Assembly (NCBI RefSeq): GCF_021869535.1
Contig: NW_026262723.1
Location: 83,018,001-83,082,000 of the forward strand
Direction: 5' to 3'
Length of the DNA stretch: 64,000 nucleotides
DNA from: Mytilus californianus
Taxonomy: Eukaryota
A program made the position numbers and the translations under genes. Positions 37,390-45,810 of this stretch are shown one piece after another (position 1 is the first letter of the stretch; each line of letters opens with the position of its first letter). The notes beneath the pieces were generated by a model that was not told the origin of the DNA, did no database searches, and saw nothing but the letters and a program-made list of their open reading frames with translations.

Positions 37390-37561
37390 CTGAAGGCCTA
37401 GTCAATGAAAAATCGTCAAATAATCATTCGGAATTAGCTCGGCATTTACCTATCTTGATAACATTTAGCTATTAGCTGAAGGCCTAGTCAATGAAAAATC
37501 GTCAAATAATCATTCGGAATTAGCTCGGGATTTACCTATCTTGAAAACATTTAGCTATTAG
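37390..37561 (+). repeat. 86-bp tandem duplication
   Basis: 37390-37475 and 37476-37561, 2 mismatches. Confidence 0.9.
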
Positions 37562-37632
37562 CTGATTGGCTCTCTCTCACAGAGAGCACCAATCAAAATC
37601 CTGGATTCGTGACGCGTTTTTATCGTACATAA

Positions 37633-38084
37633 GGCCTCAGACCACAATTAATTTGCCTATACATTCTTTGTAAAAATAATGACATATAAAAAAAATTACA
37701 CCGCTTCAAACAAAATGACATTTGCTCCACATGAAGATCATCCTTTTCTCAGGAAAATATTACAATGCCAGAAAAATCCATCAGTGCTTTCGTCCGTAAC
37801 ACCTCAATACACATCCATGGGGTTCACCTAACCAACGAAAAGAAAGTAAACACCAAAAATTTGACCTTTGAACTGAAGACAATTTACAACTTTCAATTTC
37901 AAATATTCAAGTTTTGGGTATCATAGCAATTCATTCAAACACTATTCTACCAAAATTAACCAAGAAACACTCACTTTTGCAAATAAAAAGCACAGAAAAA
38001 AATTATGGAAGAAATTACCTATTTTTACTATAGGAACTACATTCCTAGACCACGAGCAAAGGGAATTAATTGTGGTCTGAAGCC
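37633..38084 (+). repeat. Left long terminal direct repeat (452 bp) with its own 21-bp TIRs
   Basis: Starts GGCCTCAGACCACAATTAATT and ends AATTAATTGTGGTCTGAAGCC (20/21 inverted match). Confidence 0.95.
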
Positions 38085-39164
38085 TATTAGACCAACTTTT
38101 TTTCATCTAGTCCTACAAAAATTCATACGAACAATGGAAAATGTATATCGAAGAACTTTACCAACTTATTTGCCATTTAAAGACGTATTAAAAAAGTTAC
38201 ATCATATTTTATGACACAACCCATGTTCACAAATATCTTATCAGTAGAAAGCAATAAAGACGAGTTAGCCCAGCAATGTTAATTTTGAAAAGTTGAATAA
38301 CTTTCCCATTTGTTGGAATATCTTTATGAAATAAAATTTAGCATGCTGAAATAGGTTTCTAGATTTAGACATAATGTTCATTTTATGGTTTTAAAACAAT
38401 TTTAAAGAGAAATAAATTATAAGAGAAATACCATAAGAAAACAATGTTTTTAATTTTAAAAATTTAATAAAAAATAGAAATCAATCTTTTTTCTCCATAA
38501 TTCTTTCATAAAAAATTCAACAAACATATAACGAAGAAAAACATCTTTCAAAAAATTCTAAATTTATTTCAACTTTAGCAAAAATTATGGTTTTAGGAAA
38601 GCACCATTTCAAAGTAATTTCTTTCTTTTCGCATGTATTATAACAACCACTAGATGAGATTTTTTTTTCTGTAAAACATAAAAATTATACATTTTAAGTT
38701 GTATAGGAACATTTTCTAAGTAATATTCTAATTTTTAATTTAAAAAAGAAGAATTCTAGTCATGCAGGTCTATGATTTTTTTTCAATTAAAGTTAAAAAT
38801 GTCCTTTTCAAATTTTGTTCTGAAAATAAAATTCAAAATTAAATTCCATTTCATTTACATTTAAGTAAATATATGTTTTGATAGACTGACTAATCCTAAA
38901 TAAAACATATGTTATCAACCAATATGGAAATAATGTTTGTTTAATATGAAAAAAATGATTCTTAAAGGATGCCCCCTGCTCAGACTACAATAAGTGTACA
39001 TACAACTGCGGTCACTTAATTCTTAATTAATCTAGATAAATGTATCAAACATCACTTGAAGGCATTTACATAATAGGAACAATAAATAGTTTGTAACTAA
39101 CATTCAGCATCAAACTTCTTTAAGTGATTTTTAACTGCTGACTTAAAAAAATTTAATCGTCATC

Positions 39165-41189
39165 ATGTTCAAAAATGGTAATTCTCCATGGAATAAAAAG
39201 AAATCTGGTTTATCGAATCACAAACAACCTAAAAAATCAGCTTTCACAAAAGGTCACACTCCATGGAATAAAGGTACTGAAGTTTCCTGGAACACTGCTA
39301 AAACTAACACTACCTATGAGCGCATGGAATCCAATGAGTATGATCTTGTCGTCAAACCAAGAATGGATGGGATGCTATTAACAACTCCAGACTGCGAAGG
39401 AAATTCTGGTCCGATGTGTATCTTGCGACCAAAGAAGACTCCAACTGTTGATCTGAAAACAGAAATAAAGAACAATTTATTTGACGGAATGAGTATTATT
39501 GACAATGAGAAACTAATGACAATGATTAACAATGCAGTACATCTACATTCAATAAAATCTGAACCTTGTGGTCCGCCGTCATTTGCATACTATAACATTC
39601 AGAAGTGGGGAGTATGTTGGAAGTTTCAAGTTTACTGTGTCCGTTGCCAATTTATTACACCAATGTACAAACTGTACAAAACTATACCATCTCAGAAGCC
39701 AGGTCCAGATCCAGCAGCTGCAAATGTTGGTTTTGCTCTAGGCATCCAAGAGACAGCAATTGGAAATACTAGAGCACAACAACTACTTTCAAATATGAAT
39801 TGTTCACCACCATCAAAAAGTAGTATGCAAAGAACATCAAACAAAGTGTCTGATACATTAGTTGAACTTAACCAAGATGACATGGCTGAGAAGTTGGAGA
39901 TAGTTAAAGCTGTCAATAGAAAGAGAGGAGCCCCTGAAAATGAAATAAACCTAACTGTCGATGTGCGTTACTCAAGTAATACTATAACAAGCAAAAAGAA
40001 ACCTGGTCAGAATGCAAATCAAGCATGTGCAGTCGGCATTGAGACAGTGACAGATAGAAAGTACATTGTTGCAACCGCATCATTAAATCAGATGTGTTGG
40101 ACCGGAGCATGGTTACGCGGCAAGGGATTTACAATTGAATGTCCAAATGGACATCAAGAGTGCACGGCTGATCTACATCGTGCAGCTCCATTGTCAGAGT
40201 ATGAACTTGGGAAAAAGATTGGTAACCAGCTAGCTGTACAAGGAATTCTTGTAAAGTATGCAACAACAGATGGTGATGGTAGATCTGCAAATGGAATAAA
40301 TGATGCCATTCAAGCTCTGCATCCAATGTGGAAGGTAGAGCGGCTAGCAGATCCTATCCATCTGGGAAACGGGCAATTTCGTGCAGCTATGCGTGCTAAT
40401 TTCAGTGACAATATGTTCGGTTGCAGGACAAAAGAGCAAAAGAAAATAATTCAAAAGCTTTTCAGCCAGGACATAAAAGCTAGGTCTTCATTGATTACCA
40501 GTCATCTCATGGAAGTGTATGGCCGTGACATTCAGAAGATATCAGAAGACTTACCAAAAGCTTTCGAAGCTACCATGAGGTGTTATGATGGCGACTGTTC
40601 TATGTGCAGTACCAATTCCATAGTCTGTGCTGGTGCCGAGACCAAAAACTGGTGGAATCGTTCAATATTTCTGTCCTCATATCAGATCACACGCCTGCAA
40701 ATGAATGAAAATGATAAACATTTGTTATTTGAAATTTTAAAAATGAAACTAAGTATCAACGCTCTAGACAGTATGAAGCTGTATGACAATACGAACAAAA
40801 ATGAAGCTACGCATAGGGCCATAAGTGCAAATTTGCCTAAAAATGTGTACTTTAGCAGAAACATGAAAGGTCGACTTGCGGCTACTGTCCACCGTAGTAA
40901 CAATTCCCCTGGCACATCAACAAAAATGAAGTGTGTCAGACTGGGTATTGAACTTAGTAACCGGACAAATGCCTTCCTGGACAGTACCGATCGAGAATGT
41001 GCATACCAGAAAGAATATCAAAAAAGAGAAGAGGTACAGCACCGTAAACTTTCACAAAAGGCAGAAAACTTAGTTGTGCATAAAACATTCAAGGACTTAA
41101 ATAAAGCAAACATTTGTGATGTATATAAAAAAGGTCAACTTGATCCTGTGCTGGATGACCATGCCAGTTGTGTAAAGAAAAGACTTTAA
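39165..41189 (+). CDS. Kolobok-family DDD/E transposase, 674 aa, uninterrupted
   Basis: Candidate triad D266 (LTVDVRYS), D369 (TTDGDG), E547 (TNKNEATH); ERLADPIH motif; Cys/His clusters (H128/C135/C158/C161, C311/C326/H330/C333, C473/C478/C481/C488). Enclosed by the LTDRs. Confidence 0.88.
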   Translation: MFKNGNSPWNKKKSGLSNHKQPKKSAFTKGHTPWNKGTEVSWNTAKTNTTYERMESNEYDLVVKPRMDGMLLTTPDCEGNSGPMCILRPKKTPTVDLKTEIKNNLFDGMSIIDNEKLMTMINNAVHLHSIKSEPCGPPSFAYYNIQKWGVCWKFQVYCVRCQFITPMYKLYKTIPSQKPGPDPAAANVGFALGIQETAIGNTRAQQLLSNMNCSPPSKSSMQRTSNKVSDTLVELNQDDMAEKLEIVKAVNRKRGAPENEINLTVDVRYSSNTITSKKKPGQNANQACAVGIETVTDRKYIVATASLNQMCWTGAWLRGKGFTIECPNGHQECTADLHRAAPLSEYELGKKIGNQLAVQGILVKYATTDGDGRSANGINDAIQALHPMWKVERLADPIHLGNGQFRAAMRANFSDNMFGCRTKEQKKIIQKLFSQDIKARSSLITSHLMEVYGRDIQKISEDLPKAFEATMRCYDGDCSMCSTNSIVCAGAETKNWWNRSIFLSSYQITRLQMNENDKHLLFEILKMKLSINALDSMKLYDNTNKNEATHRAISANLPKNVYFSRNMKGRLAATVHRSNNSPGTSTKMKCVRLGIELSNRTNAFLDSTDRECAYQKEYQKREEVQHRKLSQKAENLVVHKTFKDLNKANICDVYKKGQLDPVLDDHASCVKKRL

Positions 41190-41391
41190 TGATGTAAAGT
41201 CACATATGATTTTCAATTTCACTTAACTGAATATGACTGTGATTATAATTTGGTTTTAAACATGTCAGTGAACTATTAAAAAGACTGATATTATTTCACA
41301 ATTATTCTAAATTCATTGAATGATAAAATGTGTCAGCAAAGTCATGTATACTTATCATGTTTAATTATCAAATAAGTAAAAATTAAATTAT

Positions 41392-41847
41392 TTATTTACT
41401 CAAATTATTATTTGCCATCTTCAGTTCAATTTTACAAGGATGAAGAGGAAATGGGTGTCCTAAACATTTCCCAACAGACACACAAGTCATTCTGCTATTG
41501 TTGAATCCATGTGGTTCAAGTGATAAATGGTCAGTATTTATGCACTTTGAATTATGACACAGATGTGACACATCTAGCCCTTGGAAGTTAAATTTTTTGT
41601 GCTTTATCATGTAGGCAAGTCTGTGAACATGAATTTTTGTCCATCCAATGGCATTTGGGAATTTGCAATTTAAAACTCCATATTTGCCATTGGATGTACA
41701 AGCCCCAGTCCAAATATTACATTCTCCATTTTGGCCAAGCATGGCATTTTCATACAATTTAGTCAGATATTTTTCAAAAAATGCCTCCATTTTAACTTTG
41801 TAAAGTTTAAGGGTCATGTCAGTGCACATAAGAGTATGAATTTGCAC
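41392..41847 (-). CDS. Small His-Me finger (I-PpoI/His-Cys box-like) endonuclease; likely ATG at 41829, 41817 or 41790
   Basis: ECNIWTG..GKYG..HVHRLAY..DVSHLCHNSKCINTDHLSLEPHGFNNSRMTC..C.GH..C parallels I-PpoI SHLCHNTRCHNPLHLCWES..N..R..C. The track start at 41847 is a GTG. Confidence 0.9.
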   Translation of the reverse strand: MQIHTLMCTDMTLKLYKVKMEAFFEKYLTKLYENAMLGQNGECNIWTGACTSNGKYGVLNCKFPNAIGWTKIHVHRLAYMIKHKKFNFQGLDVSHLCHNSKCINTDHLSLEPHGFNNSRMTCVSVGKCLGHPFPLHPCKIELKMANNNLSK

Positions 41848-42082
41848 ACTAAAAATAATTTTGTGACCTTATTTTTTACAAATTAATCCTACAATTAAAA
41901 TTTCTTGTTTTTAAAATCATATTTTTGAAATAAATTAAATTTCAAATTTAAATTTCTCCTTCAAACTTATATCAAAGGAAAGCCCTTTTCATTACGATTC
42001 TAAAACAGTGATTGTTATTCAAATACTGTAAAAAATAAGGTCAGAAAGTCATTTTTTGTGTGCAATCAACACCCGTCTCCTA

Positions 42083-42534
42083 GTCCTCAGACCACAATTA
42101 ATTTGCCTATACATTCTTTGTAAAAATAATGACATATAAAAAAAATTACACCGCTTCAAACAAAATGACATTTGCTCCACATGAAGATCATCCTTTTCTC
42201 AGGAAAATATTACAATGCCAGAAAAATCCATCAGTGCTTTCGTCCGTAACACCTAAATACACATCCATGGGGTTCACCTAACCAACGAAAAGAAAGTAAA
42301 CACCAAAAATTTGACCTTTGAACTGAAGACAATTTACAACTTTCAATTTCAAATATTCAAGTTTTGGGTATCATAGCAATTCATTCAAACACTATTCTAC
42401 CAAAATTAACCAAGAAACACTCACTTTTGCAAATAAAAAGCACAGAAAAAAATTATGGAAGAAATTACCTATTTTTACTATAGGAACTACATTCCTAGAC
42501 CACGAGCAAAGGGAATTAATTGTGGTCTGAAGCC
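42083..42534 (+). repeat. Right long terminal direct repeat (452 bp)
   Basis: Identical to 37633-38084 except position 2 (GTCC vs GGCC) and 42255 A vs 37805 C. Confidence 0.95.
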
Positions 42535-43014
42535 ATAAAGAGTTCAGGCCCTCGCGAGTGGGAGAGTCGATCACGGGGAGGGACTGAATTATTCGGGTTA
42601 ATCCAAAACTCGCCAATATATAAGCGTGAACCCCTCAGGGGGTTCACGAAATGAGAAATGTAATGAGTGACCACATTCCTTGTTAATGACCTAATAGTGT
42701 AAGCAACAAAATGATTATGTCACGGGATAATCCGTGTTTAATCAATGCCAAAACGTTGACGTAATTTGTGTTTTTAATTGCTAATTTCTTCAAAACTACT
42801 TTTACTTTACACATGAAATTTGGCACACACATGCATCGTGTCTTATTGCTTTAATCAGAGTAAAAATTATCGTGATGATACACGTAATAATCTTGCTTTC
42901 GATGAAAATGTGGTAAATTTAAATTTTAGTCTTACTAAAATGCTGAAATAATTATACTAAAATCACTTAAATACTTTCCGCTTTTGTTATAGGATATATT
43001 TAATATATAAATAT

Positions 43015-44113: not shown

Positions 44114-45810
44114 CTAATTTTTCAGTAATACATAAATTTGTCTCGCTAAAATCTAATACGTTGTTACATACACGAGCGTATCGTACAAGTTGAGATATAT
44201 AAACACCATAAGATGGTGACTGGGGAACGTCACCATCTAAAAATGGATAATTAACGATATGAAATGAAAAATCATCTCTTTTATCATAAATTTTTGTATT
44301 AAGCTTCCCGTTAATGATATAGATATCAAGATCGAGGAAAGGACAGTGGTCATTGTTAGTATTAGCTTTATTTAAAGTAAGTTCAACAGGATAAATTTCT
44401 TTAGTATACATACTGAAGTCATCATTATTGAGAGCCAATATATCATCCAAATATCTAAAAGTATTGTTAAATTTTTGTATCAGATGTTGTTTCGATGGGT
44501 CTTTGCTGATTTTAGTCATAAATTGTAACTCATAACAATACAAAAAAAGGTCCGCAATAAGTGGTGCACAGTTAGTCCCCATTGGAATTCCGATAACTTG
44601 ACGATATACGGAATCTCCAAAGCGAACAAAAATGTTATCAAGTAAAAATTCAAGGGCAGATATAGTATCAGAGCATGTCCAATTGACATAGCTAATAAGT
44701 GGTGCACAGTTAGTCCCCATTGGAATTCCGATAACTTGACGATATACGGAATCTCCAAAGCGAACAAAAATGTTATCAAGTAAAAATTCAAGGGCAGATA
44801 TAGTATCAGAGCATGTCCAATTGACATAGCTCTTTTGTTTGTTGCTACTAAAAATGACCTACAAGAGTTTGAACATATGTATTCGCATTCCGACTTTTTA
44901 AATGCCCATTTAATTAGGTGTGTGAATTTTTTCTTAATAAGAATATGAGGCAAAGTGGTATATAGGGTAGAAAAATCAAAACTTTGAACAGATTCAAAAT
45001 CACCAATATATGCATGCAATTTATCAAGTACTTCCAACGAGTTTTTGACACTCCAAAAGTAGTTAATTCCACTATTTTCAATAGCCTTATTTGAACAATT
45101 TATTATCAGGTTTTTGATTGTACCAAGTGTACTAGTAAGTAGAATAGACAATTTAGTAGTGGAACAATGACTTGAAGACGAAATAAATCTATATTTGTAA
45201 GGTGATTTGTGTAGCTTCGGAAGCCAGTACATAGTTGGGACTTTCATTGTATTTGGTTCTGCTTGTAAAGAAGTAGCTAATAGTTTATGTTTGTTACAGA
45301 TATCCTTTTCTGAAAATGAAGTCTGTTGAAACGTTGGTGAATTCGTGATTTCCTTTTGCAGAACCTCAATGTAAAATTTACGTCAAACTATAATGATATT
45401 ATTAGCAGCTTTATCAGCCGGGACAAAAACAAATTCCTTGGCTAGTTCTTTTAGTTTCTGTTTGATAAAATAGAATTTTTATGGTTGTTGTTAAGAGTAA
45501 AATGTTCTTTAAAATGACTTTTTATTATGTTGTATACATATATCAACTATCTTCATTACTGAATTAAAAAAAGAGTCCAAAGATTTTTTGTCAGCTTTTT
45601 CCCGTTTTATCCATTTCAAACAGTAAGCACGAAGTGAGTCGTGGATGATATTACGACACTCATTCCAATTAATAATTGACGAGGGACGATATTTAGGTCC
45701 TTTACTGAGGAATGGTTTTAACTCTCGGTCGCGAACGATGTTAAGGTCTCCTGTTATAACATGGAAAATGGGGCCATAAGTGTATTCGGAATTACTATAA
45801 AGTCTATATT
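44114..45810 (-). mobile_element. Penelope-like retroelement (Naiad-type) RT region, truncated and non-functional
   Basis: HVITGDLNIV..KGPKYR, VPADKAANNIIIV*RKFY, MYWLPKLHK..RFI, FDFSTLYTTLPH, GIPMGTNCAPLIADLFL, RYLDD, YDKRDDF..VNYPFL..P..SYGVYISQL. Frameshifts near 45500 and 44850; 138-bp internal duplication. Confidence 0.85.

What the first reader, a model, noticed from the sequence alone, without database searches (positions are those of the whole stretch)
41392..41847. I-PpoI-like His-Me finger nuclease carried as cargo, tail-to-tail with the transposase
Seen: the SHLCHN..C.N..HL..E...N..R..C motif, normally found in group I intron homing endonucleases, appears complete (His, Asn and Zn-ligand Cys/His all present). 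It sits in an animal DNA transposon with no rDNA or intron context; the stops are ~200 bp apart. Inference: it may nick or cut to promote LTDR recombination or excision, or to process donor or target sites. I know of no established function.
Basis: partly seen in the sequence, partly recalled or inferred. Interest (0 to 1): 0.75.

Follow-up and report, generated by a model that had tools for sequence, protein, structure and literature searches.

The report
KolobokP transposon's I-PpoI-like nuclease gene
The small nuclease gene is real and looks functional, but it is the known second gene of the published KolobokP family of mussel DNA transposons (Kojima and Bao 2022), so the finding is ordinary, although what the nuclease does has still not been tested.

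Summary
The minus-strand ORF 41392-41847 matches Pfam zf-His_Me_endon (43.5 bits, cut-off 27). I-PpoI is its only relative among solved structures, by sequence and by fold. The conserved start is the ATG at 41790, which gives 132 aa.

The gene lies tail-to-tail with an intact 674-aa transposase, their stops 202 bp apart. Both sit between two 452-bp direct repeats that each carry their own terminal inverted repeats, and the whole element is flanked by a 4-bp duplication, ATAA.

This is the architecture published as KolobokP (Kojima and Bao 2022, PMC9587614), which is common in bivalves. The His-Me nuclease on the complementary strand is a defining gene of that lineage, not cargo.

New here:
- The nuclease is under purifying selection (dN/dS 0.09-0.17), much like the transposase (0.06-0.15).
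- The nuclease-transposase pairing is seen in every related contig that extends into the neighbouring gene; one contig carries a trimer.
- A 39-nt inverted repeat just upstream of the nuclease gene is conserved across six families.

One RNA run showed no reads on the gene.

The proposed function, cutting the element's own repeats to drive recombination and multimer formation, is still untested. The scan noted a similar nuclease elsewhere in this genome (s1-423861). Low novelty.

The parts
37629..37632 (.). Left target-site duplication, ATAA
   Evidence: The same 4 bases directly follow the right end at 42535-42538. Reads and contigs of four runs join the left-flank sequence ...TTTTTATCGT directly to 42535, so empty-site paralogues of the flanking repeat exist. 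A 4-bp TSD is the usual value for mytilid KolobokP families in Table S1.
37633..38084 (+). Left long terminal direct repeat (LTDR), 452 bp, with its own TIRs (37633-37653 and 38064-38084)
   Evidence: It is 99.6% identical to the right copy, with two mismatches. It starts GG and ends CC, the Kolobok 5'-RR..YY-3' rule. Its first bases, GGCCTCAGACCACAATTA, match the published KolobokP-1_MoPh and KolobokP-1_PeMa LTDRs; KolobokP-6_MyEd differs at one of them.
38085..42082 (+). Internal region (INT), starting TATTAGACC and ending GTCTCCTA
   Evidence: It is collinear with units in L003, L008 and L007. The same INT start, tattagacc, is in the published KolobokP-4_MyGa and KolobokP-1_MyCo consensus sequences.
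39165..41189 (+). Intact DDD/E transposase, 674 aa (Pfam labels it Mutator-like; the literature places it in Kolobok)
   Evidence: PF20700 at E 4e-64. L003 and L004 also encode 674 aa. The motifs KYATTDGDGRS, HPMW.VERLADP.HL, CYDGDCS and WWNRS match a row of the published KolobokP transposase alignment. dN/dS is 0.06-0.15.
41190..41391 (.). 202-bp spacer between the two convergent stop codons
   Evidence: This is the fastest-evolving part of the unit: four-way identity is 0.20, against 0.50-0.58 for the LTDR and the two genes.
41392..41790 (-). His-Me finger (His-Cys box, I-PpoI-like) nuclease CDS, 132 aa plus stop. The mechanical ORF extends to 41847. Catalytic His76 is codon 41563-41565 and Asn97 is codon 41500-41502.
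   Evidence: In the AlphaFold model, residues 1-95 are confident, and the top four Foldseek hits are I-PpoI chains (prob 0.97-0.99), followed by I-HmuI. dN/dS is 0.09-0.17. An AATAAA signal overlaps the stop codon.
41842..41880 (.). Proximal arm of a conserved inverted repeat upstream of the nuclease start
   Evidence: The arms are 39 nt and 90% complementary, with a 146-nt spacer. The repeat is conserved in six families, with changes on both sides that keep pairing. The fold z-score is -6.55. Its function is unknown.
42027..42065 (.). Distal arm of the same inverted repeat
42083..42534 (+). Right LTDR, 452 bp
   Evidence: It carries a private G-to-T change at the second base of its TIR (42084); contigs of three runs have G there.
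42535..42538 (.). Right target-site duplication, ATAA

Best explanation
The ORF is the accessory endonuclease gene of an intact monomeric KolobokP DNA transposon. The element reads LTDR-INT-LTDR over 37633-42534 (4,902 bp) with the target-site duplication ATAA. This lineage was described by Kojima and Bao in 2022 and is abundant in bivalves.

Shown here:
- The protein belongs to the I-PpoI (His-Cys box) branch of beta-beta-alpha-metal nucleases.
- It keeps the general-base His, the metal-binding Asn, and invariant Cys/His at the positions expected for the eight zinc ligands. Four of these are directly aligned to I-PpoI and four are inferred.
- It is encoded convergently with the transposase in every related contig that extends into the neighbouring gene.
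- It evolves under purifying selection as strong as that on the transposase. So it is needed for the element's own propagation and is not a passenger.

Inferred and untested: by analogy with I-PpoI it acts as a sequence-specific endonuclease, probably a homodimer, that cuts the element's own repeated DNA. The target would be a site in the LTDR or the palindromic junction of abutted LTDR ends. The break would be repaired by homologous recombination between LTDR copies. That would amplify the element locally into (LTDR-INT)n-LTDR multimers, or release and re-integrate LTDR-INT circles, while the DDD/E transposase carries out ordinary cut-and-paste to new sites.

I put the identity and the need for the gene at about 0.9. 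I put this particular mechanism at about 0.35.
For: Identity of the nuclease:
- Pfam PF05551 above its cut-off.
- I-PpoI is the only solved structure matched by sequence and the best match by fold.
- Catalytic and zinc positions are invariant in 10 homologues.

Family membership:
- 452-bp LTDRs with their own roughly 21-bp TIRs, GG...CC termini and a 4-bp TSD.
- The LTDR start and the INT start match published KolobokP consensus sequences.
- Total length and LTDR length are close to KolobokP-1_MoPh, which is 4,894 bp with a 453-bp LTDR, a 4-bp TSD and an 18-bp TIR.
- Transposase motifs match the published KolobokP alignment.
- The architecture matches the description in the paper.

Constraint:
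- Nuclease dN/dS is 0.11 against L003, 0.09 against L008 and 0.15-0.17 against L009 and L010.
- Transposase dN/dS is 0.15 and 0.07.
- The spacer between the two stop codons evolves much faster.

Conserved pairing: L003, L004 and L007 show a Pfam-confirmed Mutator-type transposase convergent with the nuclease. L001, L002, L005, L009 and L010 show an unsearched or truncated convergent ORF in the same place.

Multimers and circle-like assemblies:
- L007 is a trimer with a period of about 4,450 bp.
- L001-L003 are circularly permuted 4,474-bp unitigs, and L003 has a 30-bp end overlap.
- LTDR read depth is about 4-5 times that of INT.

The LTDR architecture and the His-Me nuclease occur together only in this Kolobok lineage (PMC9587614).
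Against: - No biochemical or genetic test of any KolobokP nuclease exists. PMC13565253 (2026) says the model awaits confirmation.
- I found no short semi-palindromic site conserved across four families in the LTDR or INT. The only hit lies inside the transposase coding sequence and is no more than chance would give.
- The RNA-seq run examined had no reads on the nuclease gene, though only about 6% of the run was read and the tissue is unknown.
- Multimers and solo LTDRs could arise from spontaneous unequal crossover without any nuclease.
- The C-terminal 37 residues, which hold the second zinc site, are modelled with low confidence. The equivalents of I-PpoI C41, C132, H134 and C138 are inferred and not directly aligned.
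Confidence: 0.8

Rival explanations
1. The nuclease is a partner of the transposase in the transposition chemistry itself, as TnsA is in Tn7. It would cleave the strand that the DDD/E enzyme does not, or resolve or linearise a circular intermediate at the abutted TIR junction. It would not be inducing homologous recombination.
For: The convergent two-gene arrangement is conserved and both genes are under equal constraint. The paper reports excision footprints reminiscent of copy-out-paste-in IS families with circular intermediates, and notes that abutted TIRs would form a semi-palindromic site. Here the two LTDR ends match at 20 of 21 positions as inverted repeats.
Against: Other Kolobok lineages transpose with the transposase alone or with unrelated accessory enzymes (PMC9587614). 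The paper also finds that solo LTDRs and non-autonomous copies appear to be excised, which needs no cis-encoded nuclease. No physical or genetic link between the two proteins is known.
Confidence: 0.2
2. The protein is a sequence-specific DNA-binding regulator of the element and no longer cuts DNA. It might, for example, bind the conserved inverted repeat upstream of its own gene. SMAD MH1 and NFI domains derive from this fold in the same way.
For: After I-PpoI and I-HmuI, the fold search returns NFI and SMAD MH1 DNA-binding domains. A conserved inverted repeat lies directly upstream of the gene.
Against: The catalytic His76 and the metal-binding Asn97 are invariant in all 10 homologues, down to 48% identity, as is Ser75. 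A purely DNA-binding derivative would be free to lose them.
Confidence: 0.07
3. The gene is a passenger ('cargo'), a captured homing-endonuclease gene with no role for the transposon, and is simply still intact in a young copy.
For: This copy is young: the LTDRs are 99.6% identical and both ORFs are intact. Some copies elsewhere are broken, such as the in-frame stop in L012. The paper notes a few families that appear to lack the gene.
Against: dN/dS is about 0.1 between families whose synonymous sites are nearly or fully saturated. Position and orientation are the same in every related contig that extends into the neighbouring gene. The catalytic residues are invariant.
Confidence: 0.03

Closest known systems
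KolobokP DNA transposons (Kojima and Bao, Mob DNA 2022, PMC9587614), nearest published families KolobokP-1_MoPh and KolobokP-6_MoPh (Modiolus philippinarum)
   Same: LTDR of about 450 bp with its own TIRs, GG..CC termini and a 4-bp TSD. Total length about 4.9 kb. [quoted passage not shown] Multimers are present. The LTDR start and INT start sequences are shared.
   Different: The first 70 bases of the LTDR are only about 85% like the MoPh consensus (my reading). My exact-string searches did not find this family's own sequence in the supplement, so it may be an uncatalogued family or come from a species not in the paper. That is a difference of membership, not of kind.
I-PpoI, the His-Cys box homing endonuclease of a Physarum group I intron (PDB 1A73, 1CZ0 and others)
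   Same: The SHLCHN..C.N..HL..E....N..R..C core is the same. The catalytic His and Asn and the directly aligned zinc ligands are conserved. It is the best sequence and fold match.
   Different: There is no intron or rDNA context. The protein is shorter (132 against 163 aa). Outside the core, fold-alignment identity is about 16-19%. The C-terminal dimerisation tail is not recognisable. The target site is unknown.
Mutator/MULE transposons (the label of the Pfam PF20700 hit)
   Same: A DDE transposase with a C/DxxH motif, matching the Pfam model named 'Mutator-like transposase' at E 4e-64.
   Different: MULEs make 8-11 bp TSDs and have long TIRs (textbook knowledge). This element has a 4-bp TSD, RR..YY termini and LTDRs, and its transposase matches the published KolobokP alignment. 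The Pfam name should not be read as a superfamily assignment.
Other Kolobok lineages with accessory DNA enzymes (KolobokD with a DEDDh exonuclease, KolobokE with a PD-(D/E)xK nuclease, KolobokH with a RecQ helicase)
   Same: A Kolobok transposase accompanied by a DNA-processing enzyme of unknown role. KolobokD copies were noted elsewhere in this genome by the scan.
   Different: The enzyme class differs and those lineages have no LTDRs.
Bacterial composite and IS26-type pseudo-composite transposons, and Tn7 TnsA/TnsB
   Same: Direct repeats that are themselves mobile units flank an internal segment. A circular translocatable unit has been proposed. In Tn7 a separate small nuclease works with a DDE enzyme.
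   Different: In KolobokP the transposase lies in the internal region and not in the flanking repeats. The resemblance is by analogy only, with no homology shown and nothing tested here.

Membership tests
KolobokP | Long terminal direct repeats of about 450 bp (or about 660 bp) | tested here: met
   452/453-bp direct repeats at 37633-38084 and 42083-42534, 99.6% identical.
KolobokP | Each LTDR has its own short TIRs (11-18 bp, up to about 24 bp in Table S1), with 5'-RR and YY-3' termini | tested here: met
   GGCCTCAGACCACAATTAATT against the reverse complement of the end, GGCTTCAGACCACAATTAATT: 20 of 21 match. It starts GG and ends CC.
KolobokP | TSD of 3-5 bp flanking the whole unit | tested here: met
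   ATAA on both sides. Empty-site reads join the left flank directly to 42535. The window's left flank carries two extra bases (AC) relative to those paralogues, which I take to be copy-specific.
KolobokP | The internal region encodes a Kolobok DDD/E transposase of the KolobokP clade | tested here: met
   A 674-aa intact ORF. Its motifs match a row of the published KolobokP transposase alignment. I did not run a phylogeny against other Kolobok lineages, and Pfam only offers the label PF20700.
KolobokP | [quoted passage not shown] | tested here: met
   The same arrangement is seen in L001-L005, L007, L009 and L010, Pfam-confirmed for the neighbouring gene in L003, L004 and L007.
KolobokP | Multimers (LTDR-INT)n-LTDR and solo LTDRs occur in the family | tested here: met
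   The trimer in L007 has a period of about 4,450 bp. LTDR depth is 4-5 times INT depth in DNA contigs of the host. The copy in the window is itself a monomer.
His-Cys box homing endonucleases (I-PpoI group of the His-Me finger superfamily) | A beta-beta-alpha-metal core with a general-base His and a metal-binding Asn | tested here: met
   H76 and N97 align to I-PpoI H98 and N119 and are invariant. The four top fold matches are I-PpoI chains.
His-Cys box homing endonucleases (I-PpoI group of the His-Me finger superfamily) | Eight Cys/His ligands forming two structural zinc sites | tested here: inconclusive
   C78, C83, H88 and C103 align directly to C100, C105, H110 and C125. C24, C109, H112 and C119 are invariant and at plausible positions for C41, C132, H134 and C138 (the paper's alignment starts at H40). 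They lie outside the HMMER alignment, and the C-terminal segment has pLDDT below 50.
His-Cys box homing endonucleases (I-PpoI group of the His-Me finger superfamily) | Encoded inside a group I intron of nuclear rDNA and homing to the intron-less allele | tested here: not met
   The gene lies in the INT of a DNA transposon with no rDNA in the neighbourhood. I did not run an Rfam scan for a group I intron. So it is a structural and evolutionary relative but not a homing endonuclease in the functional sense.
His-Cys box homing endonucleases (I-PpoI group of the His-Me finger superfamily) | A homodimer cutting a semi-palindromic site of about 15 bp, leaving 4-nt 3' overhangs | not testable with these tools
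   This needs biochemistry. My scan for a conserved semi-palindrome found nothing beyond chance.
Mutator (MULE) superfamily | TSD of 8-11 bp and long TIRs | tested here: not met
   The TSD is 4 bp. The TIRs are about 21 bp and belong to the LTDRs. The Pfam label alone does not place the element in this superfamily.

The most novel reading that the evidence does not exclude
The conserved long-range inverted repeat directly upstream of the nuclease gene (41842-41880 and 42027-42065) is not mentioned in the KolobokP paper. It is kept in six families, with paired changes that preserve complementarity. It could be a functional site of the system, either the nuclease's own recognition or cleavage site or a hairpin switch that controls nuclease expression. 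Either would give the first concrete, testable substrate for the untested KolobokP nuclease.
Probability: 0.12. Interest if true: 0.5.

Novelty: already known. Interest (0 to 1): 0.15.

Why it matters
It matters little as a discovery. A His-Me nuclease paired with a transposase between long terminal direct repeats is the published definition of KolobokP.

It does have some practical value:
- This copy is intact and apparently autonomous, with clean ends, a TSD and empty-site paralogues, so it is a good template for the missing experiment.
- Purifying selection on the nuclease, which the paper did not measure, shows that the gene is required by the element. That makes the open question, why a cut-and-paste transposon needs a homing-type endonuclease, worth testing.

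Tried and rejected
1. **Conserved semi-palindromic target site.** I scanned 16-17-bp windows at homologous positions in four families. The only hit (40146) lies in the transposase coding region and is no more than chance would give.

2. **Upstream inverted-repeat arms as degenerate copies of the LTDR TIRs.** Local alignment against shuffles was not significant, p 0.13-0.85.

3. **INT termini (TATTAGAC.. and ..GTCTCCTA) as a significant inverted repeat, or similar to the TIR.** Not significant, p 0.8 and 0.29, although both termini are conserved between families.

4. **Mutator/MULE classification from the Pfam label.** Rejected on TSD length, termini and the match to the published KolobokP alignment.

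5. **Expression.** One RNA-seq run of the host gave no reads on the nuclease and about one read depth at the start of the transposase. Only 6% of the run was read, so this is uninformative. Run X1 holds pieces of the element, but its RNA label is a guess.

6. **Exact family identification.** Exact strings of 16-20 bases from this copy were not found in the paper's supplement, which is machine-read PDF text with line breaks, so a miss is weak evidence.

7. **Large protein representative search.** Not run, because the word search and family scans had already settled the identity.

Full report
**1. The observation**

The minus strand carries an ORF at 41392-41847 of 151 codons, counted from a GTG. 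Its product contains SHLCHNSKCINTDHLSLEPHGFNNSRMTC.

- It matches Pfam PF05551 (zf-His_Me_endon, the family named after I-PpoI) at 43.5 bits against a cut-off of 27, E 4.5e-11. It also matches HNH_3 weakly.
- Against all solved structures the only sequence hits are I-PpoI chains. E is 0.0015 with the single sequence and 1e-6 with a profile of ten homologues.
- An AlphaFold model built on that alignment has mean pLDDT 72.6. Residues 1-95 mostly score 75-92 and the C-terminal 37 residues are poor.
- The four best Foldseek hits for that model are I-PpoI chains (prob 0.97-0.99, TM 0.47-0.50). I-HmuI follows, then the NFI and SMAD MH1 domains.

So the motif is real and far beyond chance.

Homologues all begin at MEAFFEKY or MEGFFEKY. 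The eukaryotic CDS is therefore most likely 41392-41790, giving 132 aa. An AATAAA signal overlaps the stop codon.

Numbered from that Met, the following residues align to I-PpoI:

| This protein | S75 | H76 | C78 | H79 | C83 | H88 | E92 | N97 | C103 |
|---|---|---|---|---|---|---|---|---|---|
| I-PpoI | S97 | H98 | C100 | H101 | C105 | H110 | E114 | N119 | C125 |

All of these are invariant in ten homologues down to 48% identity. So are C24, C109, H112 and C119, which are the plausible remaining zinc ligands.

**2. The surroundings**

ORF 39165-41189 (+) encodes an intact 674-aa DDE transposase (PF20700, E 4e-64). Its stop codon lies 202 bp from the nuclease stop, and the two genes converge.

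Both genes lie between direct repeats at 37632-38084 and 42082-42534. These are 453 bp long with two mismatches and a period of 4,450 bp.

Each repeat begins GGCCTCAGACCACAATTAATT and ends with the inverse of that sequence (20 of 21 positions). Each is therefore bounded by its own TIRs, with GG...CC termini. Taking the repeat to start at the GG, as the published consensus sequences do, the element is 37633-42534 (4,902 bp) and is flanked by ATAA on both sides.

Reads and contigs of four public runs join the window's left-flank sequence directly to 42535. Paralogous copies of the flanking high-copy repeat therefore provide the empty site. The window's left flank has two extra bases (AC) relative to those paralogues, which I regard as copy-specific.

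**3. What it is**

A literature search led to Kojima and Bao 2022 (PMC9587614). They describe KolobokP, a Kolobok lineage found in seven animal phyla and especially in bivalves. Its features are:

- LTDRs of about 450 or 660 bp that carry their own 11-18-bp TIRs, with RR..YY termini.
- TSDs of 3-5 bp.
[quoted passage not shown] HHpred matched that nuclease to I-PpoI (1A73) and I-HmuI (1U3E).
- Solo LTDRs and (LTDR-INT)n-LTDR multimers.

Every one of these features is met here (see the membership table). Further points of agreement:

- The LTDR start here matches KolobokP-1_MoPh and KolobokP-1_PeMa over its first 18 bases, and KolobokP-6_MyEd apart from one base.
- The INT start, TATTAGACC, is shared with KolobokP-4_MyGa and KolobokP-1_MyCo.
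- Table S1 lists KolobokP-1_MoPh as 4,894 bp with a 453-bp LTDR, a 4-bp TSD and an 18-bp TIR.
- The transposase motifs match a row of the published alignment.

The Pfam name 'Mutator-like' is a label only. The 4-bp TSD and the termini exclude a MULE.

An earlier follow-up in this scan calls the host a mussel.

*(a) Conserved pairing.* The word search gave nine homologues at 46-91% identity, all carrying PF05551. In L003, L004 and L007 the convergent neighbour carries a Pfam Mutator-type hit. In L001, L002, L005, L009 and L010 a convergent ORF sits in the same place but runs off the contig and was not searched. L007 is a trimer with a period of about 4,450 bp and three essentially identical nuclease copies. 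L001-L003 are circularly permuted 4,474-bp unitigs, and L003 has a 30-bp end overlap. That is what LTDR-INT repeats produce in a de Bruijn graph.

*(b) Selection.* Nei-Gojobori dN/dS values, where dS is not saturated, are:

| Gene | Comparison | dN/dS |
|---|---|---|
| Nuclease | window vs L003 (dN 0.043, dS 0.39) | 0.11 |
| Nuclease | window vs L008 | 0.09 |
| Nuclease | window vs L009 and L010 | 0.15-0.17 |
| Transposase | window vs L003 | 0.15 |
| Transposase | window vs L007 | 0.07 |

The nuclease is therefore as constrained as the transposase, which rules out a passenger. Individual copies do decay: L012 has an in-frame stop.

*(c) Non-coding constraint.* Four-way identity across the unit is as follows:

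| Segment | Four-way identity |
|---|---|
| LTDR | 0.50 |
| Transposase | 0.58 |
| Nuclease | 0.52 |
| Spacer between the stops | 0.20 |

*(d) A conserved inverted repeat.* A 39-nt-arm inverted repeat with a 146-nt spacer lies directly upstream of the nuclease ATG. It is conserved in six families, with several pairs changed on both sides. It folds far better than shuffles, z -6.55. The paper does not mention it.

*(e) Expression.* One host RNA-seq run, of which about 6% was read, gave no reads on the nuclease. This is weak negative evidence only.

**5. Mechanism**

What is shown: an intact catalytic core, selection on the gene, obligatory pairing with the transposase, and co-occurrence with LTDRs and multimers.

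What is inferred: the protein is a site-specific endonuclease acting on the element's own repeats, either inside the LTDR or at an abutted-end junction. The breaks would be repaired by recombination between LTDR copies. This would give local amplification into multimers, or circle release and re-integration, alongside ordinary transposition by the transposase. This is the published model, and a 2026 review states that it still awaits confirmation.

Rivals:
- A TnsA-like partner in the transposition chemistry, or a resolver of circular intermediates (about 0.2).
- A non-catalytic DNA-binding regulator (about 0.07). The invariant His and Asn argue against this.
- A functionless passenger (about 0.03). 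The dN/dS values argue against this.

My attempts to find a conserved semi-palindromic target, and to relate the upstream inverted repeat or the INT termini to the TIRs, gave nothing significant.

**6. Verdict**

This is another intact copy of a published transposon lineage, and its nuclease is the lineage's known hallmark.

The scan has also noted an I-PpoI-like 'passenger' nuclease on another piece of this genome (s1-423861), and the whole element in this window was noted as s1-318081.

Novelty: already known. At most this is a family not catalogued in the paper. Interest is low. The residual value lies in the selection result and the conserved inverted repeat, which give handles for the experiment that has not yet been done.

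Noticed in passing
window 41842-41880 and 42027-42065: An inverted repeat with 39-nt arms and a 146-nt spacer lies directly upstream of the nuclease start codon. It is conserved in six KolobokP families, with several pairs changed on both sides, and its fold z-score is -6.55. The KolobokP paper does not mention it. Its function is unknown; it could be a 5' UTR hairpin, paired protein-binding sites or a nuclease site.
   Followed up: partly
window 38085-38093 and 42075-42082: The INT termini are conserved across families and in published consensus sequences (INT starts TATTAGACC and ends GTCTCCTA or GTCTCTTA). Their inverted similarity and their similarity to the LTDR TIR are not statistically significant.
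   Followed up: partly
window 39452-40555: One contig of run X1 (depth 12.6; the RNA label is only a guess) skips 1,102 bases inside the transposase ORF, with ends CT..AC, which read GT..AG on the minus strand. It could be an internally deleted non-autonomous copy or a spliced antisense transcript on the nuclease strand. I could not tell which.
   Followed up: no
window 42084: The right LTDR has a private T at the second base of its TIR (GTCC instead of GGCC). Contigs of three runs show G there, so this copy's right LTDR has a mutated left TIR.
   Followed up: no
window 42535-42700 and 37572-37631: The element is inserted into a very high-copy repeat, with contig depth in the thousands to tens of thousands against about 65 for the INT. 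That repeat is also represented in RNA reads on both strands.
   Followed up: no
window 37390-37561: A tandem duplication of an 86-bp unit (98% identical) lies just upstream of the element, inside the flanking repeat.
   Followed up: no
window 44556-44831: A perfect tandem duplication of 138 bp lies inside a reverse-transcriptase-like ORF on the minus strand, duplicating a protein segment.
   Followed up: no
L007 1-13371: This contig (ENA ERZ25067879, ctg68276_4x_c) is 13,371 bp, almost exactly three units of about 4,457 bp. The name suffix suggests it was reported as circular. It could be a true trimeric circle or an assembly artefact of a tandem array.
   Followed up: no
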